In this document: positions 3,547 to 44,614 of the stretch, piece after piece
Layout of the letters: the number at the start of each line of letters is the position of its first letter
Numbering within the stretch: position 1 is the first letter of the stretch
Assembly (NCBI GenBank): GCA_038087875.1
Contig: CM075977.1
Location: 80,910,001-80,974,000, forward strand
DNA: 64,000 nucleotides
Origin: Malacoraja senta
Taxonomy: Eukaryota
Direction: 5' to 3'
Program-made: the position numbers and the translations under genes
Notes under the pieces: model-generated
Told to the model about the DNA's origin: nothing
The model's database searches: none
Seen by the model: the letters and a program-made list of their open reading frames with translations, nothing else

Positions 3547-4118
3547 CAGTCTTTCCAGGTGAGGCAGAGGTTCACTTGCACCTCCTCCAACATCATCTAC
3601 TGTATCTGCTGTTCCAGGTGTCAACTCCTGTACATCGGCGAGACCAATCGCAGGCTCGGAGATTGTTTCGCTGAACACCTCCGCTCAGTCCGCCTTAACC
3701 AACCTGATCTCCCGAGCACTTTAAAGCTCAGCACTTTAACTCCCCCTCCCATTCCCAATCTGACCTTTCTGTCCTGGGCCTCCTCCATTGTCAGAGTGAG
3801 GACCAGCACAAATTGGAGGAACAGCACCTCATATTTCGCTTGGGCAGCTTACACCCCAGCAGTATGAACATTGACTTCTCTAACTTCAAATAGCCCTTGT
3901 TTTCCATCTCTCTCCATCCCCTCCCCCTTCCCAGTTCTCCCACCAGCCTTACTGTCTCTGAATACATTCTATCTCTGCCCCGCCCACAGTCTGAAGAAGG
4001 GTCTCGACCCAAAACGTCACCCATTCCTTCTCTCCAGAGATGCTGCCTGTCCCGCTGAGTTACTCCAGAATTTTGTGTCTACCTTCGATTTAAACCAGCA
4101 TCTGCAGTTCTTTCCTAT
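3547..4118 (+). mobile_element. Penelope-like element (GIY-YIG endonuclease C-terminus plus terminal repeat), 11-bp TSD
   Basis: NIIYCICCSRCQLLYIGETNRRLGDCFAEH GIY-YIG motif. TSD acttaacagca at 3524-3534 and 4119-4129. Confidence 0.88.
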
Positions 4119-4207
4119 ACTTAACAGCAATGTTCTCCTGAATGAACAGGCCACTGGATCCCACAGTAACAATCTTGTCTCTGAACATGGTGCAAAATAT
4201 ATGAAAG

Positions 4208-4300
4208 ATAGACACAAAATGCTGGAGTAACTCAGCAGGACAGGCAGCATCTCTGGAGAGAAGGAATGGGTGACGTTTCGGGTCGAGACCCTTCTTCAGA
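4208..4300 (-). mobile_element. Penelope terminal-repeat fragment, inverted relative to 3991-4082
   Basis: Near-perfect reverse complement of 3991-4082. Confidence 0.85.
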
Positions 4301-4653
4301 TGCAAAATATATATGCTTTGGTTTCAGTGTTTGTCAACAAGCTAGAAAATAATAATCCCCATGTTAATATAAATTAGAATTAGAAATGCTACAAACGCTC
4401 AGCAGGCCAGGCAGCATCGGATAAGAGAACTAGAGTTAATGGAACTAGGAAAGGAGGAATATAAATTGGTATTAAATTATAGGGAAAGTGGTGGAGGGAT
4501 AGTTAGATCAATAGTAAGGCCATTGTTGCACTTGGGGTAAACTGTAAATAAGGTAATCTGGTCCATTTAGTTAGGAGGAAAGAATATAGTCCTTTACTCA
4601 TAAAAGCTATGAAATTAGGTATATAGAAGGCGTGAACACAGAAAATGAATATT

Positions 4654-6745
4654 TAGCAATGTTACAAAATTTTGAGATTTTAAAAATAAAGTCTGTAATT
4701 TATCCCATCAGATAAAGCATAAAAAGAAGTTTAATTTGACACCTTATTCACTTTCATATCTTCAGTATTAAAAATGTTATGGCCATTTTCATACTCGGAA
4801 ATTAGCATCTTGTTCCCTATTGCTTTTCCATTGACTTAACACAAAAGCTGTGATCGAGGACAGTCAAAAGCCCATAACTTTCTTAAAAATTAAGAGAACT
4901 GAAAGACATTTTCAGTTATTATAGATTGAAGCATTCTGAAACAAATATGAAACAATCTTACTTAGATTAGGTATGTTACAAAACTTACCTTCAGTCGCGC
5001 TGTAATTCTGCCACTGGCCGTGTGCGCAATTTTGGCGCCTTTAAGGGGGGGCGGGGTTAAAACGCGGGTTTCTCCTCCCTTGTCCTGGTTAATATTTTGT
5101 TGGAGTACAAGCCTTGGCTGACAAATCGTTCCTAGTGGCGTTTTGTGAATTTTTTATTTTTATTAAATCGTCAATGTCAGCGCTAGAGTAATTTTAAAAG
5201 CAGCTCCTGAAGCGTCAACGCCGATAACGGGGATGGATTTCACACACGGGACAGGTAAACGAAAGTGGTTTCTTTAAATGTATAAAAGTGCTTCTTAAGA
5301 AGCCTTTAATTCACAATTTTTCATGCGACACGGTGATTTTATTCCCCGAATTAACGGCAGTATTTTTCATGCCAATACGGGGTTAAATTCACCGCAAATG
5401 AACGTTCCAAAAGATCGCGTTCCAGAAATCCTCACTCACAAGATGATTTAAATGCCCATTAATTTACAGGTATTAAACATTCAATTCCTTCCATTTGGCC
5501 TGTAAATTCATGAAAATTTGATTTAAAAATTATGTTATATTGTGAATTATTGTGTGAATGTTATTTGGACACTTAGGCTATTTAAAAATGTGAATCTATT
5601 CTTAAGAAATTAATAGATGTTTAGATCTAGTAATTGAATTTTGTAATTAGCTACAATTAGGTAACTAACTAATTATATGCTTTACTTTCATGTCTTCGAA
5701 GTAAGATTGTTTCATATTTGTTTCAGAATGCTTCAATCTATAATAACTGAAAATTTCTTTCAGTTATCATAATTTTTAAGAAAGTTATGGGCTTTTAACT
5801 GTCCTCGATTACAGCTTTTGTGTTAAGTCAATGGAAAAGCAATAGGGAACTAGATGCTAATTTCTGAGTATGAAAATGGCCATAACTTCTTTAATACTGA
5901 AGATATGAAAGTGAATTAAGTGTCAAATTAAACTTCTTTTTATGCTTTATCTGATGGGATAAATTGCAGACTTTATTTTTTAAATCTCAAAATTTTGTAA
6001 CATTGCTACTTAGATGACATGAAATTAAAGCATATAATTAGTTAGTTACCTAATTGTAGCTAATTACAAAATTCAATTACTAGATCTAAACATCTATCAA
6101 TTTCTTAAGAATAGATTAACATTTTTTAATAGCCTAAGTGTCCAAATAACATTCACACAAGAATTCACAATATAACATAATTTTTTAATCTCATTGTCAT
6201 GGATTTATAGGCCAAATGGAAGAAATTTAATGTTTAACACCTGTAAATTAATGGGCATTTATATCATCTTGCGAATGGGGATTGCTGGAACGCGATTATT
6301 TGGAACGTTGATTTGCGGTGAATTTAACCCCGTATCGGCATGAAAATTATTGCCGTTAGTTCGAGGAAAAGAATCACCGTTTCGCATGTAAAATTGTGAA
6401 TTAAAGGCCTCTTAAGGAGAACGTTTATACATAAAAAATAAACTACTTTCGTTTACCTGTCCCGTGTGTGAAATCTGTTCCCGTTGTCGGCGTTGACGGC
6501 TTCAGAAGCTGATTTTAAAATGACTCCAGCGCTGAAATTGTCGGGAGATTTTTAAAACAAAATACTCAAAACGCCCCTCGGAACGATTCTTCCGCAAAAG
6601 CTGGTACTCCAACGAAATATAATACAGGACAAGGTAGGAGAAACCCGCGTTTTAACCCCGCCCCCCCCTCAAAGGCGCCAAAATCGCGCACACGGCCAGT
6701 GGCAGAATTGCAGTGCCGCTGAAGGTAAGTATTGTAACATACCTA
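4654..6745. mobile_element. Non-autonomous DNA transposon, outer copy (4654-4967 plus 6016-6745, ~1044 bp), TAG...CTA ends, 7-bp TSD
   Basis: Imperfect TIRs TAGCAATGTTACAA / TTGTAACATACCTA. TSD gaatatt at 4647-4653 and 6746-6752. Confidence 0.9.
4968..6008. mobile_element. Second copy of the same DNA transposon (1041 bp), inserted in opposite orientation into the first, 7-bp TSD
   Basis: TAGGTATGTTACAAAA ... TTTTGTAACATTGCTA. TSD cttagat at 4961-4967 and 6009-6015. Reverse-complement homology to the outer copy over its whole length. Confidence 0.92.
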
Positions 6746-6819
6746 GAATATTAAATTGTAACATGCAGGATTAAAGAACTATAGATCAAGCAACATTTGT
6801 GGGAAGAGAAACCAGGTTC

Positions 6820-7230
6820 AATGTGATCCCACCACCAGTCACGTCTTCTGAATCCCACCCCTTTCCACTTTCCGTATTAATCACCTTTCGCAAAACACTT
6901 AAGCTCAGTACACCGAGGCCTATGGGATCTCCCAGTCGACAACCATTTCAACTCCCCTTCCCATACTGACCAATCTGTCCTGGTCCTCCTCCGCTGCCAG
7001 AGTGAGGCCTCACGCAAATTGGACAAAATAACACCTCATATTTTGCTTGGGAAACTTAAAACCCAGCGGTATGAACGTTTAATTCTCTAATTGTAAGCAA
7101 CTTCTACCTTATACCCCTCCCCTTCACCCTCTCCCCTTGCCTCCTTCCTCCACCTTATCCAGTTACACAGCTCTCTGCATTGTATCCTTCTTGAGATCAC
7201 ACTTTCTCTAGCCAACAATGGGCCTACCAG
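6820..7230 (+). mobile_element. Degenerate Penelope-like fragment
   Basis: Similar to 3700-3900 (catttcaactcccc...tctgtcctgg...cacctcatattttgcttggg). Confidence 0.65.
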
Positions 7231-7484
7231 GGCACCACCCTATCTGGGACACATGATAATAAAACTCTCTTGACTCTTGACTTGGACTTAAGCAAAAAAG
7301 GGTTCTTGGGGGGAAAAAAAGCTACCTTAAATTTAGTTGCTTTTGGTTGATACCTATGGTAGGTTGAAGACTATTCCATGCTTTATTTGTGCGGGGGAAC
7401 TCCATGGAGCAGCCAGCATCTCTGGTTGGAAGAAATTGGGTGACGTTTCGGGTAGAAACCCTTCTTTACATTTCCTCTTGTTTT

Positions 7485-23861: not shown

Positions 23862-25215
23862 TGACAATAGACAATAGGTGCAGGGGTAGGCCATTCGGCC
23901 CTTCAAGCCAGCACCGCCATTCAATGTGATCATGGCTGATCATCCCAAATCAGTACCCCATTCCTTCCTTCTCCCCATATTTCCTGACTCCGCTATTTTT
24001 AAGAGCCCTATCTAGCTCTCTCTTGAAAGCATCCAGAGAACCCGCCTCCACCGCCCTCTGAGGCAAAGAATTCCACAGACTCACCACTCTCTGTGAGAAA
24101 AAGTGTTTCCTCGTCTCCGTTCTATATGGCTTACTCCTTATTCTTAAACTGTGGCCCCTGGTTCTGGACTCCCCCAACATCGGGAACATGTTTCCTGCCT
24201 GTAGCGTGTCCAAAGCTTAAACAATCTTATATGTTTCAATGAGATCCCCTCTCATCCTTCTAAACTCCAGAGTGTACAAGGCCAGCTGCTCCATTCTCTC
24301 AGCATATGACAGTCCCGCCATCGCGGGAATTAACCTTGTAAACCTACGCTGCACTCCCTCAATAGCAAGAATGTCCTTCCTCAAATTAGGGGACCAAAAC
24401 TGTACACAATACTCCAGGTGTTGTCTCACTAGGGCTCTGTACAACTGCAGAAGGACCTCTTTGCTCCTATATTCGATTTCTCTTGTTATAAAGGCCAACA
24501 TGCCATTCGCTTTCTTCACTACCTGCTGTACCTGCATGCTTACTTTCATAGACTGATGTACAAGGACCCCCCGATCCCGTTGTACTTCCCTTTTTCCCAA
24601 CTTGACGCCATTTAGATAGTAATCTGCCTTCCTGTTTTTGCTACCAAAGTGGATAACCTCACATTTATCCGCATTAAACTTCATCTGCCATGCATCTGCC
24701 CACTCCCCCAACCTGTCCAAGTCACCCTGCACTCTCATAGCATCCTCCTCACAGTTCATACTGCCACCCAGCTTTGTGTCATCTGCAAATTTGCTAATGT
24801 TACTTTGAATCCCTTCATCCAAATCATTGATGTATATTGTAAATAGCTGCGGTCCCAGCAACGAGCCTTGCGGTACCCCACTCTTTGATTCCTCTCTGCC
24901 AACCACTTCTCTATCCATGTCAGCACTCTACCCCCAATTATCAAATGCTTTCTGAAAGTCCAGGTATACTACATCCACTGGCTCTCCCTTGTCCATTGTC
25001 CTAGTTACATCTTCAAAAAATTCCAGAAGATTAGTCAAGCATGATTTCCCCTTCGTAAATCCATGCTGACTCGGACCGATCCTGTTACTGCTATCCAAAT
25101 GTTCGGCTATCTCATCTTTTATAATTGACTCCAGCATCTTCCCCACCACCGATGTCAGGCGAACAGGTCTATAATTCCCTGTTTTCTCTCTCCCGCCTTT
25201 CTTAAAAAGTGGGAG
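23862..25215 (-). mobile_element. CR1 LINE RT region plus 3' end, with small internal deletions
   Basis: [53 protein letters not shown]. (caataga)n tail. Confidence 0.93.
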
Positions 25216-26160: not shown

Positions 26161-27876
26161 CGGTAATGTCTTTGAATGGTCATTGTATTGCATTCTTGTG
26201 GGATGAATGTTACTTGCCACATATCAATTCTGGGGCGAATTGAATTGACGGTGATGGTAACGATCTCAGCAATATTCTGAGAAGGATCGTCTATTTGACA
26301 CTTGCTGAACATGGTTGAAAATGTTTTAGCCTTTTTTGTCCCTTGCTGTTCCATGGTTCCACCCAATCTAATTTCAACTAATCAATTTTCTGAGCTAAGA
26401 ACTTCCCCTCTATAGTGTTTATTCTATGTTTTGAAATCACACAAGCTTTCTATTTTGCCTATCCTTCAAGAAAAATGCTTGTCAACATCCTTTGAAAAAA
26501 ACAAAGTGCTGAAGGAACTCAGCAGGTCAGGCATCATCTCTGGCAGCATATCTGGATTTCTTATTTTTCCCAGTTCTGATTAAAGATCTTCGATCTAAAA
26601 CATTATCTCTTTTTTTACCACAGATGCTGCTTGACCTAATTTTGCAGCACTTTCTGTTAATAGCTCTTGATCCATTGTTCAATTTTATAAACTTATTAAG
26701 CCTTTATTTTGTTCCCTTGATACTCTATGTAGAACAATAACAACTTCTGTACCAGCGCATTCAATAAGCATACTGTGTTGCTAAGGAGGTTTTTGATAAA
26801 TTATTGATTTATCAAATTATACTGACATTTTGATATTATGAGATCGCATCTTGATGTACAAAACTTCCAAATTTCCACTCTGGTGCTGGTACTAATTTAT
26901 GTATTTCGTTTTGATGTTTTCAGATGTTTTGAAAGTTATATTCTGAAATTGACTACGTTTTTAGCATGAAAAATTAGTTATTAAGACTGGAAAGGTTGCA
27001 CTATTGTGCTGGTGAGATGTCAACATGGAATATCGTCACAGGCACAGTCTCTGCCAGGGAGAATTGTGCGCTCATCAATTATATTGGCTAATAGATGGCA
27101 GACCAGAAGGTAGGGTAATGAGTAGAGTTGGCCTTCTGTCATCCAGTTACAGTTGGAGTGAGGTAATGAAAAAACCACCACGTTGATTTGTAATTTTAGT
27201 CATGCTGTGCTTTGTGAAAAATAACATATAGCTTAGTTTTATATTTTATCTGACCTAAATATACCAGTTGTTGAACTATAATCTAATTAGCAGTCTACCA
27301 TAATCAGCAAGTTAATTGTGATTCATTCTTAGAATTGTAAAATTAAAAGTTAGACGATTGTGTTGATTATTACAGCTTCCAGCTATTTCAATTCTGTGAG
27401 TGAAATCATGGATGAAATTTATCGCATATGTTATTAAGAAAGGTTGGTGGAAAGTCTTTCCCTTTTCCAGTTGAGCAATTGTTTACCATCCTTGCCTATA
27501 AGCCTTTGTAAATCAGTTTGAAGTAACTAAATAGAAAGGTGTTGAGTATTGAATTAAAGTCTGCTTCAGTAATAGCTGTTCTGATCTGGGTTTGTCAGTA
27601 TAATTACATATATGCTAAATAATTAAACAGAGAAGTTTGAAATGCAAGGTGTCTAGACATGTCTGGTGTTGGTGTCCTGTGTGACCTTAAATCTGAGGGT
27701 TTGTCAGAGAGTAGAGGATGTCTGGTACCATAGGTAATTCAAGATGACCATGAAATTATGAGATAGGAATGCATTTGTAAAATGACGTTTTTATCTGGCA
27801 AGATTGTAATATCTGCACATACTCTATTAAATAGGATAATATGAATATATTTTCATGTTAGATGAAATGTGAATGA

Positions 27877-28030
27877 AAAGACTTGCATTTATAAAACACT
27901 TTCATGGCTTCAGATTGTTTTAGTCCGTGAGATACTTCTGAAATATACTCACTTTTGTAACATAGGACAGTCAGCAGTTGGTATTACATAGCAAGATCCC
28001 AAGGTGACCATTGTGGTTAATACCGTTACT
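27877..28030 (-). mobile_element. Degenerate Deu-domain SINE (SacSINE1-like) relic
   Basis: gacttgcatttata..cactttca..ttgtaacatagga..cagcag...agcaagatccca, collinear with 39420-39690 and with the recalled DeuSINE consensus. Confidence 0.5.
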
Positions 28031-28442
28031 ATTGTTGAACATTTATTAACCCATTGCTCAACAGATGGTGGATCAGATCAAAGATCTGCAATCCTACCAC
28101 GTCAATTGTATATAGTGTTGGACTACTCTAGTCAGCTAAACAGCTAATGTGATAAGGGATCTCAAAGATATCCCATCCTAAGAGATGGCAGGGCCCAGTA
28201 TGCGAACGCTAATTACAAGGCTGTAGCATTTACAACCATGTTCAGCCAGAAGTGCCTAATGGATAATCCATCCAGGCTTCCTCCTGCTACAGGCCATCTC
28301 CTGGTAATGAACTCATTCCATTTTTACAGACATGAAGTAAATTCTGTCCATAAAAATCACTTGATATGGTAATCCTTGACACAGTATTGTATTGGATGGC
28401 ATCAAAAGCACATCAGATGAATCAGAAATAATTATAAAAAAT

Positions 28443-28484
28443 AGAGAGAGAGAGAAAGAGATAGAGAGAGAGAGAGAGCGAGAG
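28443..28484. repeat. (GA)n microsatellite, imperfect
   Basis: Direct inspection. Confidence 0.9.
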
Positions 28485-29689
28485 TCACTTGCAGCTGCTC
28501 AGTTGAATTATTTACACATCACCAATATAACTTAAAAGATTTTTTTTTTTACATCAATACCATTACAGTATGTAATATTTCTTAGATTATTCCAAAGAAG
28601 CAATTTTACAATCTCTTTGCCCAAACATGCTGATTTTTTTTATTTAGAAAGTTAATGTTTTGCTGAGCAAAAGACAAATCTACTGACAGAATCTGTGGAA
28701 GGAAATGTTTTGAGTCTGGACCCTTCTTCAGACTGATGGAATAATGGGGAGAAAGCTGGTTGAAAAACAGGATAGGAAGTGCTGGGGTAAAGAGTTGGCA
28801 AGAGTTTTCAGAACTTTGTCTACATTAAGGTAGATGCTGATCCTCATCTTGTTTGAAAATCTTTAAAATCTGTTAAAAGATTTCAGTTAATAATGAAATT
28901 TGCACACTGAATTCCCAAATGAGCCTGAGATCCATTTCACTCCTGTGGTCTCATTTGGTAAAAAACTCATAGATTTCCTGCTTGCAGTTCAGTGGCATAG
29001 CACCTGCTTTGTCAGCAAGAGATTCTGGCAATCTGATGGGCAACCACAAGTGGCAGCAGTTATGATGGTAACTGTTCTTCAGCAGAATGTACATTCCTGC
29101 TTGTGATTGGTGAAGCTAGTTGTATACCAAGTTTAGCGCACATTTGTCAAAATGCAAATAGCATGATTACATTTGCTATGAGCAAATACATTTCTTTTAA
29201 ACTCTTTCTACAAAAATGTTTGGGTGTGGACAATATTGGAGAAGCATACTGATGCTTGGTGCATCTGTTGAAAGTTCAGCTGTTTATCCTGTTCAGGTAT
29301 TGTAATGTTATACTACTGTCACATTGTCTTTGTTAATAATATTATACTCATATCATTGTTTATCGAACAAGTATTCACAGTAGCGATATATGTACATAAC
29401 ATTTCTGAGGCCATCTAGGCAAATTAGTTTCTATAAGATGCTGATAATTGAATGAGTTTATTATATTCTCAATTTAATTAGGGTAGGCTATAATACTGCT
29501 AACAGATTCTGCTAGAATAGGTTAAGATGAACAATTTCATCCCAATCTGATTTACCTGATCAATTAGAATAAATATGAAAATTTACCACATTTCTTACAT
29601 AATTGCAGATTATAAATTATAACACTAAAATAAGAGGAAATTATTTATATTTCTTCTAGTCCTTGAACAATGTATTTCCCAGAAGCATT

Positions 29690-29775
29690 AGTCTGAATAA
29701 GGGTCTTAACCCGAAACGTCACCCATTCCTTCTCTCCAGAGATGCTGCCTGAGTTACTCCAGCTTTTTGTATCTA
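29690..29775 (+). mobile_element. Penelope terminal-repeat fragment
   Basis: Matches 3990-4080. Flanked by cccagaagca on both sides (probable TSD). Confidence 0.8.
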
Positions 29776-30855
29776 TCCCAGAAGCAACAACGCAACTGAA
29801 AAGAAGAAACGCGAGCTGCCAGTAGTGACTATCCTCACAAAGATCTTTACGCCAGTCCAGTTAAATCCTGTGGCTGAAATCTTTATGTTTTTTTACCCTT
29901 GTTTTAAATTAAGGGTAAATTTACACAAGATTCTGCCTCATATCATTAAATAGTCCTTTAATATTGGAATTCCACTCACTTCATTTATACCGTGTGGATT
30001 ATAGAATTTTACTATTTGATTTATTTGTAGATTATGGATATCACAGGCAAGATAATGCTGTTTGTTCTTAAGAAGGTGGAGTGTTTTTTGATTTTCAGAA
30101 AAGTTTACAAGTTCTCTTCAAAGGGCAGTTAAGAATCAACTAAGAATTTGTTAAGAATTCCCATCTGATTAACCTTTTTGCGCACAGTCCTTTTAAGATG
30201 TTTGGTGCATCAAGAAATCAATTTTGGTAAAGATTCCAAATGATCATGGTCTTTTCAGATTATGCCTACTATTAAGCATAATTAAGACATAAATCTAAAT
30301 TTTACACAGACTTTGTTTGAAGTTAAATAGTTTCATCTGAATATGTGTCTCTTTTGTTGATCTTTGCAGCTCAGTTGCAGTTATCCATAGTTTATTCTGC
30401 AAAACGATTGTTAAGATTTATTTTATTTTATTGTTGGTTGAAAATCCTTCAGAATGATATACAATTTGGGCTTTTTTTCATCTGATCTCACATAACAGCC
30501 ACTTTAAAAAAATGTGCATCTTAAATTCAATTTTTAAATATCAAAGTGAAACTGGAAGAAAATAGATGTATTGATCATTATTTATGAAAACTGAGATATT
30601 AGTTTGTTCAACCAATGTTTTCAATTTAGTAAATTACATTGTTTCGTTAGAAATCCACTTTGATCCCCCTGGTGAAGTATGGAGGGTGCAGGTAGATGTG
30701 CTCGTAGATAGAACTTGGCAAATTACTATTAATTCACTCAGGGTCAGATAGCACTTTGCCCAAGACAATTTGAAAGCCAATTACCTGGTCACTTAGATCC
30801 TTTATTTTCATTAAATTTGATTAGATATTTCATTCAGTTGGTAATAATACTGAAG

Positions 30856-31069
30856 GAACATCGGGAACATGTTTCCTGCCTCTAGCGTGTCCAAAGCCTT
30901 AACAATCTTATATGTTTCAATGAGATTCCCTCTCATCCTTCTAAACTCCAGAGTGTACAAGCCCAGCTGCTCCATTCCCTCAGCATATGACAGTCCCGCC
31001 ATCCCGGGAATTAACCTTGTAAACCTACGCTGCACTCCCTCAATAGCAAGAATGTCCTTCCTCAAATTC
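30856..31069 (-). mobile_element. CR1 RT fragment
   Basis: Near-identical to 24178-24387. Confidence 0.88.
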
Positions 31070-32005
31070 CCCAAACACGGCCTTGTGGGTGGAATGAAAA
31101 TGAGCGGAATGAAAATGAGCCTTACACTGCCTTGTCACATAGACAGCAGCCAATAACACAATTAGATTTTCATAAAATCCAGACAGTTTGAGTATCTTAT
31201 ACTTGACTGTCTAGCCAATACATCAGGCCTCTGGAGCTGTATAGGTTTGCTTTGTCATTGCTTGGTAAGAAAACCCAAATGAAAATTATTAATGCCCCCT
31301 GAGGCTAATCCCATGTCAATATTGCTGTGTACAGGAGCACTCAGATAATGATTTGCTTAATAGATGAATATTTAACATGACTACTTCCACCACCTCCATG
31401 ATTTTGAGATAAAAATAATCACCCATAATGAATATTCAGATCAATTTGGATAAGATGAATATTGTAAGATAATTTTAAGACATTCTAAGTTATGCCATTC
31501 TTTAAAATTAATAATTTACAGAGTAGAGCATAGTCATATAGCTCTAGAGCATGGTTACAGACTCTAAGAGCCAGGTCATCCTTGCCAACCAAGTTTCTAA
31601 CCAAGTTAGTCCCACTTGCCTGTGCCTAACCAACATCCCTTCAAACCTTTTCTATCCATGTGCTTATCCAAATGTCTTTTAAAGACTGTAATTGTACTTG
31701 CATTTGCTACTTAATCTGACAGCTCATTCCATATACGTATTATCCTCTGTGTGAACAGCTTGCCCATCAGGTCTCTTTTGAACCTTGTCCTTCTCGCCTT
31801 ACATCTGATCTCTAGGTTTAGACTCTCCTACCAAGGGTAAAGACTGTGGCTATTTACCTGATCAATCCTCCTCATGATTTTATAAATATCTATAAGGTCA
31901 CTTTTCAGCATGCTGTATTGCAGGGTAAAAAGACCCAGCCTATCCAGCATCTCCTTACAACTCACCCTCCATCTTTGTATCCTTTTCAGTTTTGTGACAT
32001 CCTTA

Positions 32006-32536
32006 AGGGCCTGTCCAACCTGGGCAACCTAATCCGTGAGTTCTGGCGAGTTTGCCCTCGACTCAGACTCGCAGCATGGTCGACACGAGGTCATAGGAGG
32101 TCTTCGTAACTCTCCTTCATGCTCGAGAGTGGTCTCCGCGTACTCGAGGCCTCAGCTAGGTCGCGGCGTTTTTTTCAACATGTTAAAAAATGCCCGCGAG
32201 TAAAAAAAGGTCGCCATGGAAAAAATTGATACTTTTTTTACTCGTAGGTTTAGTCGTAGTAGGTCGTCATGTTAGTCGTAGGTAATCGAGGGTAGTCAAA
32301 GGTAATCGAAGGTAGTCTAAGGTAGTCGTAGATAGTCTTCATCGTAGTCGAAGGAGGTCGTCTTCACTCTCCACTATTCGGTGTCCAATTTTCCCGAAGT
32401 TAGTCGTAGCTAGTCGAAGCTGGTCTTCAACATAGTCGAAGGAGGTGTTCTACATAGTCGAAGAAGGTCTTCAACATGTCATTTTTTCAAACTCTTCTAA
32501 ACTTGCCAATTAGGTCGCCCAAGTGGGACAGCCCCT
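32006..32536. mobile_element. PIF/Harbinger-type MITE
   Basis: AGGGCCTGTCCAAC / GTGGGACAGCCCCT ends. TTA TSD at 32003-05 and 32537-39. Internal gtagtcg repeats. Confidence 0.85.
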
Positions 32537-32760
32537 TTATGTAGCAGGATGATTAGAACTGTACACAGCACTCCAAATGTGGCTTTACCACCATCTTGTA
32601 CAAGTGTAACAATGTACCAACTCCTGTACTTAATATCCTGAACAACAAAGGCAAGCATGCCAAACACCACCCTATCTACTTTTGTCGCCACTTTAAAGGA
32701 ATTACATACTTGCACACTAGGTCTTTCAGTTCTACTACATTCCCAAGGCTCTTCCATTTA

Positions 32761-33364
32761 AGGCTCTGTCTTACCTGTTTGCGGTCATCGGCGGTGAAGC
32801 GCGGCGTCGCCGGTAGCGAGGACCGCGCGGCAACGGCGAGAGCGTCGAGCCTATCCACCGGAGCGCCGCACGGATGCTGCGCGGGGGCCGAGTTAATTCA
32901 AACACGGCGGGTCCCACGTGCTTGCGGTAAGTAAATAAAAGGGCGGGCCGACTGCGATGACGTCGGCCCGCCGCACGTGACTCACCAGCGGCGGCTGTGG
33001 CAGTGGAGGTTTGACGCACGGCGCTCGAGCCATACTGGCGGCGGCCCGTGCGAGCGGCCGTGCCTCACTGGCGGCGGCACGTGCCTCACTGGCGGAGGCT
33101 GTGGCAGTGGAGGTTTGACGCACGGCGCTCGAGCCATACTGGCGGCGGCCCGTGCGAGCGGCCATGCCGCACTCCTGCATCACTGGTGGAGGTTGTGCGG
33201 TGAGTATTTAGTTTTGGACATTGTCGATTTTATTTTAGCACCGCGCGGTGTTGGGAACACCGCCGCACGGCCCGGGAATTGTACTTTCTCACGAGTGCGC
33301 GGTCTATGGCGGCAGATTCTTCTCGTTTCGCCGCCATAGACCGCAGACTCGTGAGACAGGCCTT
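32761..33364. mobile_element. PIF/Harbinger-type MITE, GC-rich, with an internal ~85-bp direct repeat
   Basis: AGGCTCTGTCTTAC / GTGAGACAGGCCTT ends. TTA TSD at 32758-60 and 33365-67. Confidence 0.75.
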
Positions 33365-33658
33365 TTACTGTTAGTTGTGCCTGGTTTGTTTTACCCACAT
33401 GCAATATCTCTTGATCTCTGGATTAAATTATATTTGCCATTCTTTGTTCATTGGCCCTGTTGCTCAAGATCCTATTGCATCTTAAATAACCTCCTTCACT
33501 GTCCACTATACCACCTATTTTAGTGTCATCCACAAACTTCCTAAACAACTTTCTAGTCAACATAAGTAATGAACAGCAGAGGACCCAGCACCAATCCCTG
33601 TGGCACACTACTTGTTACCAGACTCCGGTCTGAAAAACAACCCTCTACCATCACCCTC

Positions 33659-33796
33659 TTCTTCTTATTGCGTATGGCATGCACAGCCTAAAGTTGTAGG
33701 ACAACTTGTTCTATTTGATCTTATTTGATTGTGCACGCCGGGTTGATTGCATTTGTCGAAACAGGGTGGACTACGTGAAGGTTGCAATCTTCCACC
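33659..33796 (-). mobile_element. Short retroposon insertion with (AAG)n tail
   Basis: (ctt)n at the left end. Flanked by ccatcaccctct / ccatcaccgtct, a 12-bp TSD with one mismatch. Confidence 0.55.
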
Positions 33797-34675
33797 CCAT
33801 CACCGTCTGATTCCTGCCATCAAGCCAATTTTGTATACAGTTGGCTACCTCAATCACCCGGGTTCCCAAGATGGCAAGTTATATCATCAAAACCCACATG
33901 AGCCAGGCCACACACAGGCTGCTACCATCAGGAAGAGGGTACAAGGGCCTGAAAACTGTTACTCCAGTTTCAAGAGCAACTTTGTTTTTTGCTTCATCGT
34001 GGTCTAGTGTATTTAGAAAAACTGACAATTTATTGTATATTTATTTTTGGTATTGCTTTTAATGTGTCTATAAAGCTGCAGCAAGTAAGAATTTAATTGT
34101 TCCAGTTCATATCCTGTGCATATGACAAACACTTCTGAGTCCTATAACTTGTTTCATTTTTTGGAGTCTTTGCTTTCCTTGAAGTCATATTGGAAACTTA
34201 CCTTATCTATACTAACAGGTACTCTTTTCATTTGTTCCCAAGATATTGAGCAATGTTTTGCCTCTGAAAGGGCACTCATAAATCACCTTATTAAATTATT
34301 CTTTATGCCGTTGTTAGGCCACATGATGGTTCATTAAGTCAGTCACGATGAATGGGAAGAGTCATGTGATATACTATCTGAGTAGAGATTGCAGGTTGTT
34401 TTTACTGAAATACATTAGTGAACCCAGGTTTTATGGTCAATGCCAATCCACAAATCACCAGATTTATTGAATTTTATCTCATATTTTTCTATCCTTGAAC
34501 TCTCTTTATCCAAAATTTCTAGACCCTAATCACTTACCATTTTATTACATACTTCGTAAAACATCATTCTAATCATTAGTTTCCTGTTTTAAAACATGAA
34601 TTAGGAGCGGGAGTAGGTCACTAAGTCCTTTGTATGCTCCACCATTCAATGAGATTCATTGAATCACCATTCAAT

Positions 34676-34959
34676 TGGTGGCGCAGTGGTAGAGTTCTGA
34701 CTTACAGCTCCAGAAACCCGGGTTCGATCCTGGGTGCTGTCTGTACGAAGTTTATACGTTCTCCCTGTGACTGCATGGGTTTCATCCAGGTGCTCCAGTT
34801 TCCTCCCATATTCCAAAGATGAGCAGGTTTGTAGGTTAATTGGCTTCTGTAAATTGTCCCTAGTGTGTAGGATAGAATAGTGTACGGCTGATCGTTGGTC
34901 GATGCAGACTCGGTGGGCCGAAGGGCCTGTTTCTATGCTGTATCTCTAAACTAAACTAA
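34676..34959 (+). mobile_element. tRNA-derived V-SINE (HE1-like), near full length
   Basis: A box tggcgcagtgg, B box ggttcgatcc, V domain, CR1-derived 3' end ggccgaagggcctgtttc, (ctaaa)n tail. Confidence 0.85.
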
Positions 34960-35809
34960 GATCATGGTTGATCAACTCTGAATTCCACTCTACCCAGGAT
35001 AACCCCTTTGATATTAAGTATATATCAACATCTGCCTTAAAAACATTCAAAGTCTCCACAGCTTTTGAGGAAGAGAGTTGCAAAAATTTAGCAGGTCAGG
35101 TAACATCTGTGGGGAGAGAAACAGAGCTAACATTTCATGTTGAAGACTCTTTGTCAGAACTGGGAAGACAACAAGAACTGGTTAAACTGCAGGAAGGACA
35201 GGGGAAGAAGAATGCCTCTGGTAATGTAAAACTAGGGTGACCATGAGGTTAAGCTATAAAATGGAGGCACGAGAAACTGCAGATGCTGAAATCTTGAGCA
35301 AAACACAGAGTGATAGAGCAACTCAGCGGGTGATGTTACCCGATCAGTTGAGTTCCAACAGTACTTTGTATCTGGTCAGTGAGTGAATGGGAGCAGTTCG
35401 AGAGTGAGAACACCGACAAAGTCGAGAGTGTTTAATTGTCATATGTATTGGAAATGTGACAATAAGATTCTTCTAAAAAAACATAGACAAAAGAATGTAG
35501 GAATGCAAAATGCATAGAAGGAAGACATGTCGGCAGGTAAGGACTGCTATGAGGTTTCTAATAATGTAAATTATCAGCTGATAGGTCATCTACTATTGTA
35601 ATCTTTATTTTAACGCATGCCTAAATTACCCAATGATGGACAGGACATGTGCTTGGATTTGAGGCATGTTAAATATCCTTATGTTCTTCAATTCCTTATT
35701 ACAAACCCCTGTTGAAATGAATCCCAAGGATCCTTTGAGATTCCATAATACAGTAATTGCTTTTCTTCTTTGCAATAGGATTTTGCTCAATTTACAACAG
35801 ACCTTAAAT

Positions 35810-37012: not shown

Positions 37013-38650
37013 CAGTGTTCTCCATAATGTTTGGGACAAAGACCCATCATTTATTTATTTGCCTCTGAACTCCACAATTTGAGATTTGTAATTGACAAAA
37101 TCACTCGTGGTTAAAGTGCACATTGTCAGATTTTATTAAAGGCCATTTTTATACATTTTGGTTTCACCATGTAGAAATTACAGCTGTGTTTATGCATAGT
37201 CCCCCCATTTCAGGGCACCATAATGTTTGGGACACATGGCTTCACAGGCGTTTGTAGTTGCTCAGGTGTGTGTAATTGCCTCCTTAATGCAGGAATAAGA
37301 CAACTCTCAGCACCTAGTCTTTCCTCCAGTCTTTCCATCACCTTTGGAAACGTTTATTGCTGTTTATCAACATGAGGACCAAAGTTGTGCCAATGAAAGT
37401 CAAAGAAACCATTATGAGACTGAGAAACAAGAATAAAACTGTTAGAGACATCAGGCAAACCTTAGGCTTACCAAAATTAACTGTTTGGAACATCATTTAG
37501 AAGAAAGAAAGCACTGGTGAGCTTACAAATCGCAAAAGGACGGGCAGGCCAAGGAAGACCTCTCTCTTCTGACAGAAGAATTCTCTCTATAATAAAGAAA
37601 AATCCCCAAACACCTGTCCAACAGATCAGAAACACTCTTCAGGAGTCTGGTGTGGATTTGTCAATGACCACTGTCCGTAGAAGACTTCATGAACAGAAAT
37701 ACAGAGGCTACACTGCAAGATGCAAACCACTGGTTAGTTGCAAAAATAGGATGGGCAGGTTACAGTTTGCCAAGAAGTGCTTAAAAGAGCAACCACAGTT
37801 CTGGAAAAAAGTCTTGTGGACAGATGAGAAGAAGATTAACTTATATCAGAGTGATGGCAAGAGGAAAGTATAGAGGTGAGAAAGAACTGTCCAAGATCCA
37901 AAGCATACCACCTCATCTGTGAAACACGGTGGTGGGGGTGTTATGGCCTGGGCATGTATGGCTGCTGAAGGTACTGGGGGATAAGATTAGGACCAGAATT
38001 ACAGTAGCATAATGAATTCTGAAGTGTATAGACACATCCTATCTGCTCAAGTTCAAACAAATGCCTCAAAACTCATTGGCTGGCAGTTCACTCTACAACA
38101 AGACAATGATCCCAAACATACTGCTAAAGCAACAAAGGAGTTTATAAAAGCTAAAAAATGGTCAATTCTTGAGTGGCCAAGTCAATCACTTTATTTGAAC
38201 CCAATTGAGCATGCCTTTTATATGCTGAAGAGAAAACTGAAGGGGACTAGCCCCCAAAACCTGCATAAGCTAAAGATGGCTGCAATACAGGCCTGGCAGA
38301 GCATCACCAGAGAAGACACCCAGCAACTGGTGATGTCCATGAATCGCAGACTTCAAGCTGTCGTTGAATGCAAAGGATATGCAACAAAATACTAAACATG
38401 ACTATTTTCATTTACATGACATTGCGGTGTCCCAAACACTATGGTTCCCTGAAATGGGGGGACTATGTATAAACACTGCTGTGGTTTCTACATGATGAAA
38501 CCAAAATGTATAAAAATGGCCTTTATTAAAATTCGACAATGTGCACTTTAACCACATGTGATTTTTTTTCTATTACAAATCTCAAATTGTGGAGTACAGT
38601 GGCAAATAAATAAATGATGGGTCTTTATCCCAACATTATGGAGGGCACTG
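37013..38650 (+). mobile_element. Tc1-like DNA transposon (IR/DR type), full length, inactivated transposase 37372-38395
   Basis: ~215-bp TIRs starting CAGTG with internal cataatgtttgggaca direct repeats, TA at the right flank. VLWTDE, QQDNDPKHT and SxxLNPIE motifs. Contains stops and frameshifts. Confidence 0.95.
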
Positions 38651-42425: not shown

Positions 42426-44614
42426 CTAGACTAAGTGGGACCCGTTGGGTCCCATGTTCACACTGGAGGGCTGGTCCCCCAATGCAATAATCCACTTCTC
42501 CACCAATTCCAATATTGGTGGCCGGGGGGGGGGGGGGGCTTTCTGGAGCGCTAGTTTGGGTGTTGTGGGCTGAAGGGACTGATTTCCAGAGGGCTAGTAT
42601 GGACATTGTGGGCTGAATGGATTCTTGGGCTGGCAGCTCAGTCACTCAAGCCTGGTGTGCTGACAGCTCACTCACTCACGGCTGGTGGGCTGGCAGTTGA
42701 CTCGTGGCTATTCCTTGAAATACCATTTCAAGTAGGGTGCCAGGCCACCAAATTCAAATGCAGTCTCATATCAAGCAGGGTGCAAGGCCATCAAATTCAA
42801 ATGCACTCATACCATTTCAAGCAGGGTGCAAGGCCACCAAATTCAAATGCAGTCTCATACCATTTCAAGCAAGGTGCAAGGCCACCAAATTCAAATGCAC
42901 TCATACCATTTAAAGCAGGGTGCTAGGCCACCAAATTCAAATGCAGTCTCATATCAAGCAGGGGACAAGGCCACCAAATTCAAATGCAGTCTCATACCAT
43001 TTCAAGCAGGCTGCAAGGCCACCAAATTCAAATGCAGTCTCATACCATTTCAAGCAGGCTGCAAGGCCACCAAATTCAAATGCATTCATACCATTTCAAG
43101 CAGGCTGCAAGGCCACCAAATTCAAATGCAGTCTCATACAATTTCAAGCAGGGTGCTAGGCCACAAAATTCAAATGCACTCATACCATTTCAAGCAGGTT
43201 GCAAGGCCACCAAATTCAAATGCATTCATACCATTTCAAGCAGGCTGCAAGGCCACCAAATTCAAATGCAGTCTCATACAATTTCAAGCAGGGTGCTAGG
43301 CCACAAAATTCAAATGCAATCTCATACCATTTCAAGCAGGGTGCAAGGCCACCAAATTCAAATGCAGTCTCATACCATTTCAAGCAGGGTGCAAGTCCAC
43401 CAAATTCAAATGCAGTCTCATACCATTTCAAGCAGGGTGCAAGGCCACCAAATTCAAATGCAATCTCATACCATTTCAAGCAGGGTGCAAGGCCACCAAA
43501 TTCAAATGCAGTCTCATACCATTTCAAGTAGGATGCAAGGCCGCCAAATTCAAATGCAGTCTCATACCATTTCAAGCAGGGTGCAAGGCTGCCAAATTCA
43601 AATGCAGTTTCATACCATTTCAAGCAGGGTGCAAGGCCGCCAAATTCAAATGCAGTCTCATACCATTTCAAGCAGGCTGCAAGGCCACCAAATTCAAATG
43701 CATTCATACCATTTCAAGCAGGCTGCAAGGCCACCAAATTCAAATGCAGTCTCATACAATTTCAAGCAGGGTGCTAGGCCACAAAATTCAAATGCACTCA
43801 TACCATTTCAAGCAGGTTGCAAGGCCACCAAATTCAAATGCATTCATACCATTTCAAGCAGGCTGCAAGGCCACCAAATTCAAATGCAGTCTCATACAAT
43901 TTCAAGCAGGGTGCTAGGCCACAAAATTCAAATGCAATCTCATACCATTTCAAGCAGGGTGCAAGGCCACCAAATTCAAATGCAGTCTCATACCATTTCA
44001 AGCAGGGTGCAAGTCCACCAAATTCAAATGCAGTCTCATACCATTTCAAGCAGGGTGCAAGGCCACCAAATTCAAATGCAATCTCATACCATTTCAAGCA
44101 GGGTGCAAGGCCACCAAATTCAAATGCAGTCTCATACCATTTCAAGTAGGATGCAAGGCCGCCAAATTCAAATGCAGTCTCATACCATTTCAAGCAGGGT
44201 GCAAGGCTGCCAAATTCAAATGCAGTTTCATACCATTTCAAGCAGGGTGCAAGGCCGCCAAATTCAAATGCAGTCTCATACCATTTCAAGCAGGGTGCAA
44301 GGCCACCAAATTCAAATGCACTCATACCATTTCAAGCAGGGTGCAAGGCCACCAAATTCAAATGCAGTCTCATTCCATTTCAAGCAGGGTGCAAGACCAC
44401 CAAATTCAAATGCAGTCTCATACCATTTCAAGCAGGGTGAAACCACCATAAAACCACATAAAACACCACAAAACCGTATAAAAACCACATAAAAACCACA
44501 CTCACAGTTCAGACATTCAGTGTGTTCAATTGATTCACAGCTGAGACAGAGAGTTGTGACATCTCGTTCCCCCATCTTGCAGAGATTGAGCCATGCCCAC
44601 ACCTCCAGGTTTTA
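42426..44614 (-). mobile_element. Non-autonomous Helitron related to 11872-21713, 5' end missing
   Basis: Same 3' hairpin plus CTAG|T in reverse (42426-42454). 42426-42690 is homologous to 21480-21713 and 44500-44614 to 12141-12245. Confidence 0.82.
42720..44440. repeat. 48-bp minisatellite (46-bp variants, ~36 units) inside the Helitron
   Basis: taccatttcaagcagggtgcaaggccaccaaattcaaatgcagtctca repeated. Confidence 0.97.

What the first reader, a model, noticed from the sequence alone, without database searches (positions are those of the whole stretch)
4654..6745. Transposon inserted backwards into its own family member: 7-bp TSDs and two interlocking long inverted repeats
Seen: a ~1.04-kb non-coding element (TAGCAATGTTACAA...TTGTAACATACCTA) contains a second full copy in reverse. 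Both insertions have exact 7-bp TSDs (gaatatt; cttagat), and the 8th base mismatches for the outer copy. The uninterrupted inner copy shows the empty site. Known: canonical hAT elements make 8-bp TSDs, and 7 bp is limited to minor groups (some P elements, minor hAT subgroups such as hATw). Inference: this is a poorly described 7-bp-TSD family. The geometry gives two overlapping stems, 4654-4960 with ~5700-6008 and 4968-~5690 with 6016-6745. These could form ~300-bp and ~720-bp dsRNA or cruciforms in the intron.
Basis: partly seen in the sequence, partly recalled or inferred. Interest (0 to 1): 0.72.

Follow-up and report, generated by a model that had tools for sequence, protein, structure and literature searches.

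The report
Skate transposon nested backwards in itself
A 1-kb non-coding cut-and-paste transposon of a very abundant skate family has a second copy of the same family inserted backwards inside it. Both insertions duplicated 7 target bases. The structure is real, but it is what chance predicts for so common a family.

Summary
The outer copy is 4654-4960 plus 6016-6745. It holds a reversed full copy at 4968-6008. All four ends carry the same 14-nt terminal inverted repeat. Exact 7-bp duplications flank both insertions.

A single-copy contig from a related species runs from 4646 straight to 6746. That is an orthologous empty site with one copy of the target, so the 7-bp duplication is proven and the insertion post-dates the species split.

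The element has no ORF over 49 aa and no RNA-family match. It is highly repeated: summed contig depth is about 10^4-10^5 times that of the flanks in three species. Self-nesting is therefore expected by chance.

The CpG-rich core is abundant only in the window's own species.

The two long stems cross. Only one can form at a time, and the energy minimum uses the roughly 660-bp one. No RNA run was available, so intron location, dsRNA and editing remain untested.

The superfamily is unresolved. hAT-like is most likely, but no autonomous partner could be reached with these tools.

The scan had already noted this family on other DNA of the same genome (s1-179777, s1-141636, s1-184421). It had also noted an intact hAT-like transposon with a 7-bp duplication (s1-140432).

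The parts
4647..4653 (.). Left copy of the 7-bp target duplication (GAATATT) of the outer element
   Evidence: The related species' empty site holds one copy only (X3 record 17).
4654..4960 (+). Outer element, left part (element positions 1-307), starting with the terminal inverted repeat at 4654-4667
   Evidence: It is 95% identical to the matching part of the inner copy. Many contigs of other species stop matching exactly at 4654 (table 7).
4961..4967 (.). Left copy of the 7-bp duplication (CTTAGAT) made by the inner insertion; this is outer-element sequence
   Evidence: The inner copy reads CTTCGAA at the same place. Uninterrupted copies in other species read CTTGGAT (loose end at 4954).
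4968..6008 (-). Inner element, a full 1041-bp copy in reverse, with terminal repeats at 4968-4981 and 5995-6008
   Evidence: No ORF over 49 aa. No Rfam or tRNA match.
6009..6015 (.). Right copy of the 7-bp duplication (CTTAGAT) of the inner insertion
6016..6745 (+). Outer element, right part (element positions 315-1044), ending with the terminal repeat at 6732-6745
   Evidence: It is 90% identical to the inner copy's matching part.
6746..6752 (.). Right copy of the 7-bp duplication (GAATATT) of the outer element
6290..6720 (+). CpG-rich core of the outer copy (approximate bounds); the inner copy's counterpart is about 4990-5440
   Evidence: The right parts hold 33 and 27 CpG at 36-38% G+C. At 88% likeness or more, depth over the core is high in the window's own species only (table 2).
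6722..6730 (+). Perfect 5' splice-site consensus AAG|GTAAGT, 15 nt from the element's right end and pointing outwards; the inner copy has the same motif at 4983-4991 on the minus strand
   Evidence: Read directly from the sequence and conserved in both copies. Use as a splice site is not tested.
5252..5260 (+). Second donor-like motif CAG|GTAAAC on the other side of the CpG-rich core, pointing into the element; the outer copy has it at 6451-6459 on the minus strand
   Evidence: Read directly from the sequence and conserved in both copies. It matches 7 of 9 consensus positions. Function is not tested.
6755..6764 (+). 10-nt copy of the terminal-repeat core (ATTGTAACAT) in the host flank, 2 nt after the duplication
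   Evidence: It is the only occurrence of this 10-mer in the 62 kb outside the element. No difference from the window was listed there for the related species' empty-site contig, though that table was truncated.

Best explanation
This is a non-autonomous cut-and-paste DNA transposon of about 1.04 kb. It has 14-nt terminal inverted repeats (about 19 nt if imperfect positions are allowed) that begin TAG, and it has no coding capacity. It belongs to a family that a transposase supplied in trans has amplified to roughly 10^4-10^5 copies in several skate species.

One copy inserted into single-copy DNA after the window's species split from its relative, duplicating GAATATT. A second copy, from a differently diverged source lineage, then landed in reverse at position 307 of the first and duplicated CTTAGAT.

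The staggered target cut of the mobilising enzyme is 7 nt. The most likely enzyme is a hAT-like transposase. An intact hAT-like element with a 7-bp duplication was noted elsewhere in this genome, but the link to this family is inferred and not shown.

The nesting itself is most simply a chance hit, given the family's abundance. It is the same architecture as maize 'double Ds'.

Because the inner copy is reversed, a transcript through the locus could fold into one of two alternative long hairpins. The roughly 660-bp stem is preferred over the roughly 310-bp stem.
For: **Shown**
- Structure, terminal repeats and exact 7-bp repeats.
- Paralogous empty site.
- Orthologous empty site with exactly 2099 nt absent, in a single-copy contig of a related species (X3 record 17, depth 21.8, 17 mismatches over 537 flank nt, about 3.2%).
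- A contig of the window's own species crosses the left junction 4440-4677 without a mismatch (X1 record 1).
- No ORF over 49 aa. The 42-aa ORF shared by both copies is only 67% identical at protein level, so it is unconstrained.
- Summed word depth is 0.2-1.3 million on the element against 16-30 in the flanks, and 27,000-35,000 contigs were laid per DNA run.
- Loose ends with unrelated flanks at 4654 and 6008 fix the family terminus (table 7).
- The fold uses only the long stem.

**Inferred**
- The two copies differ by 8.5%, more than the roughly 3.2% that could have accumulated since the species split. They therefore came from already diverged source copies.
- hAT-like affinity rests on three leads: the TAG start; 7 of 8 identity of the right end (TAGGTATG) with the Ac end TAGGGATG (PMC3260210); and the unchecked earlier notes s1-140432 and s1-195574.
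- Three other first-reader notes report the same 1.04-kb TAG...CTA element with 7-bp duplications. These are unchecked.
Against: - No autonomous partner was seen, so the superfamily is not established.
- The canonical hAT features are not met: the duplication is 7 bp rather than 8 bp, and the fifth terminal base is not G.
- No repeated subterminal motif was evident.
- The copy-number estimate rests on summed contig depth, which the tool itself says is not a copy number.
- A terminal-repeat-like 10-mer sits 2 nt beyond the outer duplication, and an 8/10 match sits 4 nt beyond the inner one. This hints that targeting may not be random.
- Short-read contigs do not span the nested junctions, so the internal structure rests on the assembly plus its internal logic (exact duplications and diverged copies).
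Confidence: 0.8

Rival explanations
1. The 2.09-kb nested pair formed elsewhere and then transposed to this site as one unit using the outer ends. On this reading the locus records one insertion, and the composite may be a family of its own.
For: Both outer ends are intact and flanked by a clean 7-bp duplication. The related species lacks the whole 2099 nt at once, so the data cannot order the two events at this locus.
Against: No contig with more than single-copy depth was seen bridging the inner junctions, although the listing was truncated. The simplest reading needs no extra step.
Confidence: 0.12
2. Self-nesting is favoured and not due to chance. The transposase is drawn to sequences that resemble its own terminal repeat, so insertions land beside such motifs, including those inside other copies.
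For: - ATTGTAACAT, the core of the right terminal repeat, recurs 2 nt after the outer duplication and nowhere else in 62 kb. That gives roughly p = 0.001-0.002, assessed post hoc.
- The inner copy's matching flank has an 8/10 match 4 nt after its duplication.
- The 25 nt ending in the inner duplication are 76% identical to the inner copy's own end (D7).
- Dada elements show a comparable sub-terminal motif repeated in their targets (PMC3706591).
Against: There are only two insertions, the pattern was noticed after the fact, and the offsets differ (2 against 4 nt). The 5' flanks show no such motif. The flank consensus from other copies has low agreement, 0.37-0.44 (table 7).
Confidence: 0.15
3. 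The family belongs to the P superfamily, or to another group bearing the C/DxxH motif, and not to hAT.
For: A 7-bp duplication is typical of Galileo in the P superfamily (PMC4168063, PMC2775673). P-type elements are reported in this genome by earlier notes. BuT5 is a precedent for a roughly 1-kb non-coding P-mobilised element (PMC3698922).
Against: From my own knowledge, terminal repeats of described P-superfamily elements start with CA, not TAG. The earlier notes on P-type elements in this genome report 8-bp duplications. An intact 7-bp element in this genome was judged hAT-like in fold (s1-140432, unchecked).
Confidence: 0.2
4. An assembly artefact, such as a fold-back or a chimeric join, created the inverted structure.
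For: Short-read contigs do not span the inner junctions.
Against: An artefact would give a perfect inverted duplicate of adjacent sequence. What is seen instead is a complete element bounded by its own terminal repeats, an exact 7-bp duplication and 8.5% divergence.
Confidence: 0.03

Closest known systems
Maize 'double Ds' (one Ds inserted in reverse into another Ds; Ac/Ds, hAT superfamily)
   Same: One non-autonomous copy sits inside another copy of its own family in inverted orientation, with its own target duplication. Four transposon ends lie within about 2 kb. The right end TAGGTATG differs from the Ac end TAGGGATG at one of 8 positions (PMC3260210).
   Different: - The duplication is 7 bp here and 8 bp for Ac/Ds.
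- No AAACGG-type subterminal repeats were seen here.
- The two copies are 8.5% diverged, not identical.
- Chromosome breakage is not tested here. Nested Ds are rare in maize (PMC3260210), whereas this family's abundance predicts many nests.
Galileo, 1360 and BuT5 (P superfamily, Drosophila)
   Same: Galileo makes 7-bp duplications (PMC4168063). BuT5 is a roughly 1-kb non-coding element moved by a P-type enzyme (PMC3698922). Inverted copies of these elements provide long inverted repeats that can recombine (PMC2775673).
   Different: The ends here start TAG and the terminal repeats are short (14-19 nt). No THAP-type partner is known for this family, and the host is a vertebrate.
Dada superfamily
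   Same: 6-7-bp duplications (PMC8869645). A terminal motif is echoed in the target near the insertion (PMC3706591).
   Different: Dada has no terminal inverted repeats and inserts in tRNA, snRNA and 5S genes (PMC3706591). This element has clear terminal repeats, and its targets are unique DNA and another transposon, with no RNA gene present.
Inverted Alu pairs in primate introns (long dsRNA, ADAR substrates)
   Same: Two copies of one repeat family in opposite orientation within about 1 kb give a long imperfect duplex in any transcript that crosses them.
   Different: The stems here are much longer (313 and about 660 bp) and are mutually exclusive. Transcription and editing are untested.

Membership tests
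Non-autonomous TIR (cut-and-paste, DDE-type) DNA transposon | Terminal inverted repeats at both ends | tested here: met
   The 14-nt pattern TAGSWATGTTACAA is exact at all four ends, and 16 of the first 19 nt match between the left and right ends.
Non-autonomous TIR (cut-and-paste, DDE-type) DNA transposon | Target-site duplication of fixed length, absent from the empty site | tested here: met
   Two exact 7-bp repeats are present. An orthologous empty site (X3 record 17) and a paralogous empty site each hold one copy.
Non-autonomous TIR (cut-and-paste, DDE-type) DNA transposon | No transposase gene; many copies | tested here: met
   The longest ORF is 49 aa. Depth is 10^4-10^5 times that of the flanks, and more than 27,000 contigs were laid per DNA run.
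hAT superfamily | 8-bp target-site duplication | tested here: not met
   The duplication is 7 bp in both insertions. Repbase does list hAT families annotated '7-bp TSD' (PMC4455052), so this feature is not absolute.
hAT superfamily | Termini of the form YARNG (recalled from my own knowledge), or a match to a known hAT end over positions 1-11 with at most 1 mismatch (the Repbase rule, PMC4455052) | tested here: inconclusive
   The ends read TAGCA and TAGGT. Positions 1-3 fit and position 5 does not. Against the Ac end (PMC3260210) there are 3 mismatches in 11. No library of other hAT ends was on hand.
hAT superfamily | Autonomous partner encoding a hAT transposase (DDE core with C/DxxH motif and a hAT C-terminal dimerisation domain) | not testable with these tools
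   No transposase of this kind lies in the window. The candidate partner noted earlier (s1-140432) could not be read.
hAT superfamily | Short repeated subterminal transposase-binding motifs | tested here: inconclusive
   No convincing repeated 7-mer was found in the terminal 250 nt. Two copies are too few to judge.
P superfamily | 7-8-bp duplication | tested here: met
   7 bp. Galileo also makes 7 bp (PMC4168063).
P superfamily | THAP-domain transposase in an autonomous partner | not testable with these tools
   No partner was available.
Dada superfamily | No terminal inverted repeats; insertion in multicopy small-RNA genes | tested here: not met
   Clear terminal repeats are present. No tRNA or Rfam family lies at or near either target.
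'Double Ds'-type nested pair | A family member inserted in inverted orientation inside another member, with its own duplication | tested here: met

The most novel reading that the evidence does not exclude
This 1.04-kb subfamily may be more than a passive deletion derivative. In the window's own species it carries a roughly 350-bp CpG-rich, promoter-like core with divergent splice-donor consensus sites, one of them 15 nt from the element's end and pointing outwards. That would make it a portable promoter and first exon spread in tens of thousands of copies. Its mobilising enzyme, a hAT-like clade with a 7-nt stagger, may also choose targets beside sequences that resemble its own terminal repeat. 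Such targeting would make self-nesting, and double-Ds-like rearrangement, systematic and not accidental.
Probability: 0.12. Interest if true: 0.7.

Novelty: new member of a known kind. Interest (0 to 1): 0.3.

Why it matters
The nested pair on its own is an ordinary by-product of a very abundant transposon family. Four points give it some value.

1. **Clean proof of the 7-bp duplication.** Orthologous and paralogous empty sites both confirm it for a family that the scan has met repeatedly and that may depend on an unnamed hAT-like transposase.
2. **Evidence of recent activity.** The family was still moving after two skate species split, and one species amplified a subfamily with a CpG-rich core.
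3. **A natural test case.** The locus holds four transposon ends and two alternative long inverted repeats. It could be used to test double-Ds-type instability or dsRNA and editing in a cartilaginous fish, if the site is transcribed.
4. **A testable lead on target choice.** A terminal-repeat-like motif sits next to the target.

Tried and rejected
- **Other copies in the window:** none. blastn found only the two copies, and the terminal-repeat pattern found only the four ends.
- **RNA families and tRNA:** only sub-threshold chance hits (mir-1789 at 23 bits against 88; RAGATH-35 at 23 against 39) and no tRNA. A structured-RNA or SINE origin is rejected.
- **Coding remnant:** the 42-aa ORF present in both copies is 67% identical at protein level against about 88% at DNA level. 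It is treated as unconstrained.
- **Autonomous partner:** window ORFs of 110 aa or more are retroelement reverse transcriptases and a Tc1-type DDE_3 remnant, with no hAT or P transposase. Word searches of earlier notes for a transposase with TAG/CTA ends found none. I had no way to read the sequence of the intact 7-bp element noted earlier.
- **Public collections:** the termini are absent from metagenome contigs and from prokaryote genome contigs. Twelve viral-contig hits match only the bare 19-25-nt pattern and nothing else of the element, so they are chance matches.
- **RNA evidence:** no run on record as RNA holds the stretch. Run X19 was flagged 'probably DNA'. Expression, splice-site use and A-to-I editing could therefore not be examined.
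- **Host gene or intron:** no notes exist for this window and no host exon was recognised. This is left open.
- **hATw as a 7-bp group:** the only paper found that names hATw gives no duplication length for it.
- **Costly protein searches:** not used, because the element encodes nothing worth searching.

Full report
**1. What is there**

A local blastn of the reversed inner copy against the window finds three things:
- the inner copy itself (6008-4968);
- 4654-4966 at 95.5% identity;
- 5996-6745 at 88.1% identity.

Nothing else in the 64 kb matches. The 14-nt pattern TAGSWATGTTACAA matches exactly at 4654, 4968, 5995-6008 (minus strand) and 6732-6745 (minus strand), and nowhere else without mismatches.

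The outer copy is 4654-4960 plus 6016-6745, flanked by GAATATT at 4647-4653 and 6746-6752. The inner copy is 4968-6008 in reverse, flanked by CTTAGAT at 4961-4967 and 6009-6015. An exact 7-nt repeat at a boundary fixed by homology has a chance of about 6 in 100,000 per insertion.

**2. Is the duplication really 7 bp?**

Three lines of evidence agree.

(a) Global alignment of the outer copy, with one duplication kept, against the reversed inner copy is collinear across the insertion point with no length change. The outer copy reads CTTAGAT and the inner copy reads CTTCGAA. Uninterrupted copies in other species read CTTGGAT at that place (loose end at 4954).

(b) For the outer copy, the base beyond the repeat mismatches on both sides.

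(c) A 700-nt contig of a related species is decisive (run X3, record 17, depth 21.8, which is the single-copy level). It matches 4440-4646 with its positions 164-370 and 6746-7075 with its positions 371-700. Exactly 2092 + 7 bases are missing and one GAATATT remains. Cut-and-paste excision normally leaves a footprint, so this clean site is the ancestral empty site.

A contig of a third species stops matching at 4653 (X6, record 24). That is consistent with an empty site there too, but it is not shown.

For the inner copy, an 8-nt repeat could be read if the element's last A were counted as target. The family terminus argues against this. The outer copy defines the terminus, and so do dozens of contigs with unrelated flanks whose match stops at 4654 or 6008 (table 7).

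**3. What kind of element**

- There is no ORF above 49 aa.
- The one ORF shared by both copies (42 aa) is 67% identical in protein against about 88% in DNA, so it is not under coding constraint.
- There is no Rfam family above threshold and no tRNA.
- It is therefore a non-autonomous terminal-inverted-repeat element.
- It is very abundant. Summed contig word depth is 0.2-1.3 million over the element against 16-30 in the flanks, and 27,000-35,000 contigs were laid in each of three DNA runs from three organisms.
- The tool warns that this is not a copy number. I take it only as an order of magnitude, 10^4-10^5 copies.
- Earlier notes identify the genome as a skate (s1-191409). I did not check this.

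**4. Family structure across species**

Element positions 1 to about 560 and about 920 to 1044 are equally deep in all three species. The CpG-rich core (about 580-916) is deep only in the window's own species. It drops 100- to 1000-fold in the other two at 88% likeness or more (table 2).

The 1.04-kb form with this core is therefore a lineage-specific, recently amplified subfamily. The other species mostly carry relatives that lack this core or have a different one.

The core keeps its CpGs (33 and 27 in about 730 nt at 36-38% G+C), which fits a young age.

It holds a GC box flanked by two divergent splice-donor consensus sites, both conserved in the two copies:
- AAG|GTAAGT at 6722-6730 (4983-4991 on the minus strand in the inner copy), 15 nt from the right end and pointing outwards;
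- CAG|GTAAAC at 5252-5260 (6451-6459 on the minus strand in the outer copy), pointing inwards.

Earlier first-reader notes on other copies saw the same features (s1-179777, s1-141636). Whether this is the promoter and first exon of the autonomous parent, or a captured host fragment, is not known. No RNA data were available to test it.

**5. Timing**

Flanks of the window's species and the related species differ by 17 of 537 nt, about 3.2%. Both insertions are younger than that split. The two copies nevertheless differ by 8.5%: 4.8% in the left 314 nt and 10% in the right 730 nt, with 37 transitions and 51 transversions. Most of this difference must therefore pre-date insertion, meaning the copies came from different source lineages.

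In the partly shown table of variant letters, the outer copy's right part differs from its own species' majority at many places (for example 6127, 6186, 6223, 6297, 6364, 6394, 6479). Several of the inner copy's letters are the majority in its own species but the minority in the relatives (5695, 5698, 5851). This fits an older or minor-lineage outer copy and a younger inner copy. The table was truncated, so I do not quantify this.

**6. Is self-nesting remarkable?**

If about 3 x 10^4 copies of 1 kb fill about 1% of a genome of a few Gb, some hundred or more insertions should have hit an earlier copy by chance, and half of those would be reversed. This is my own arithmetic on a rough copy number. 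The nest therefore needs no special mechanism.

One observation does not fit pure chance. The 10-mer ATTGTAACAT, which is the core of the right terminal repeat (6731-6740), recurs at 6755-6764. That is 2 nt beyond the outer duplication, in host DNA, and the 10-mer occurs nowhere else in the 62 kb outside the element. No difference from the window was listed at that place for the related species' empty-site contig, though the table was truncated. The corresponding flank of the inner copy has an 8/10 match 4 nt beyond its duplication. The repeat search also found the 25 nt ending in the inner duplication to be 76% like the inner copy's own end (D7). With two insertions and a post-hoc test this is a lead only. 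Dada elements show a similar echo of a sub-terminal motif in their targets (PMC3706591).

**7. The 'interlocking' stems**

The left arm of the outer copy pairs with 5702-6008. The stretch 4968-5694 pairs with 6016-6745. In order along the strand these pairings cross, so they cannot both form as ordinary helices.

ViennaRNA on 4654-6745 gives -1140.7 kcal/mol. It has 657 pairs in the long stem and none in the short one. Taken as separate hairpins, the two give -1090.6 and -640.7 kcal/mol. The longest perfect runs are 72 and 53 bp.

A transcript through the locus would thus contain a long imperfect duplex of the kind that ADAR or Dicer enzymes act on. No run on record as RNA holds the stretch, and the one 'RNA?' run laid was flagged as probably DNA. 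From general knowledge, cruciform extrusion in DNA is unlikely with spacers of 320-735 nt. I found no evidence for or against an intronic location.

**8. Which superfamily?**

Groups known to make 7-bp duplications:
- Galileo in the P superfamily (PMC4168063, PMC2775673).
- Dada, with 6-7 bp. It has no terminal repeats and inserts in small-RNA genes (PMC8869645, PMC3706591). That excludes it here.
- Some hAT families in Repbase, whose own paper uses 'hAT ... 7-bp TSD' as an example query (PMC4455052).

The ends begin TAG. The right end TAGGTATG is one change away from the Ac end TAGGGATG (PMC3260210). Over 11 nt, however, there are three mismatches, so the Repbase rule for assigning non-autonomous elements (PMC4455052) is not met against Ac.

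Earlier follow-up notes on this genome describe an intact 4.3-kb transposon with a 7-bp duplication and a 978-aa transposase of hAT-like fold (s1-140432, s1-195574). An active 7-nt-stagger enzyme in the same genome is the natural candidate mobiliser of a family that moved recently. I could not read that element's termini, so the link is inference.

My odds are about 60% for hAT-like, about 20% for P-like, and the rest for other groups.

**9. Comparison with known cases**

The architecture is that of maize double Ds, in which one Ds sits reversed inside another. In maize such nests break chromosomes and are rare (PMC3260210). Here there are four intact ends within 2.1 kb, including two 'reversed-end' pairs. 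If the enzyme is still active, these are a possible substrate for aberrant transposition. This was not tested.

**10. Verdict**

The element is a new member of a known kind: an abundant non-autonomous element of a transposon group with a 7-bp duplication, caught in a chance self-nest.

The scan had already noted the same family on other DNA of this genome (s1-179777, s1-141636, s1-184421).

- the orthologous empty site;
- the cross-species depth profile;
- the mutual exclusivity of the two stems;
- the lead on a terminal-repeat-like target motif.

Noticed in passing
window 6755-6764 (and 4943-4967 compared with 5991-6015): The host flank carries an exact 10-nt copy of the element's terminal-repeat core 2 nt after the duplication, and this 10-mer is unique in the window outside the element. 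The inner insertion site also resembles the inserted end (76% over 25 nt). This may point to target choice beside terminal-repeat-like motifs.
   Followed up: partly
window 4990-5440 and 6290-6720: The element has a CpG-rich, GC-box-bearing core flanked by two divergent splice-donor consensus sites. The core is highly repeated only in the window's own species and 100-1000 times rarer in two related species (table 2).
   Followed up: partly
window 4000-4092 with 4198-4290; also 4217-4301, 4384-4437, 7393-7471: Copies of a short, SINE-like repeat lie just upstream and downstream of the finding. Two of them form a 93-nt inverted pair at 92% complementarity with a 105-nt spacer (I4, D1-D3).
   Followed up: no
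window 6915-7390: The right flank beyond about 6915 is itself highly repeated, with summed depth of 10^4-10^5 in all runs. Only 4440-4637, and to a lesser degree 6816-6914, look close to single-copy (table 2).
   Followed up: no
window 38012-38395 (+): A 127-aa ORF matches the Tc1/mariner-type DDE_3 domain at the Pfam cut-off (E 1.5e-06). It looks like a remnant of another DNA transposon family.
   Followed up: no
window 42984-44492 (+), 46064-47497 (+), 50156-51562 (+), 24217-24918 (-): Three of these long ORFs match reverse transcriptase (RVT_1; E 5e-33, 5e-19, 1e-12), which fits LINE-type retroelements. The 502-aa ORF at 42984 has only sub-threshold, repeat-like matches.
   Followed up: no
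table 5 (joints 4969->5659 and 5513->6195, 'opposite strands', in runs X3 and X6): Contigs of two other species join parts of the element in opposite orientation. This hints that inverted or nested arrangements of this family also exist in those genomes.
   Followed up: no
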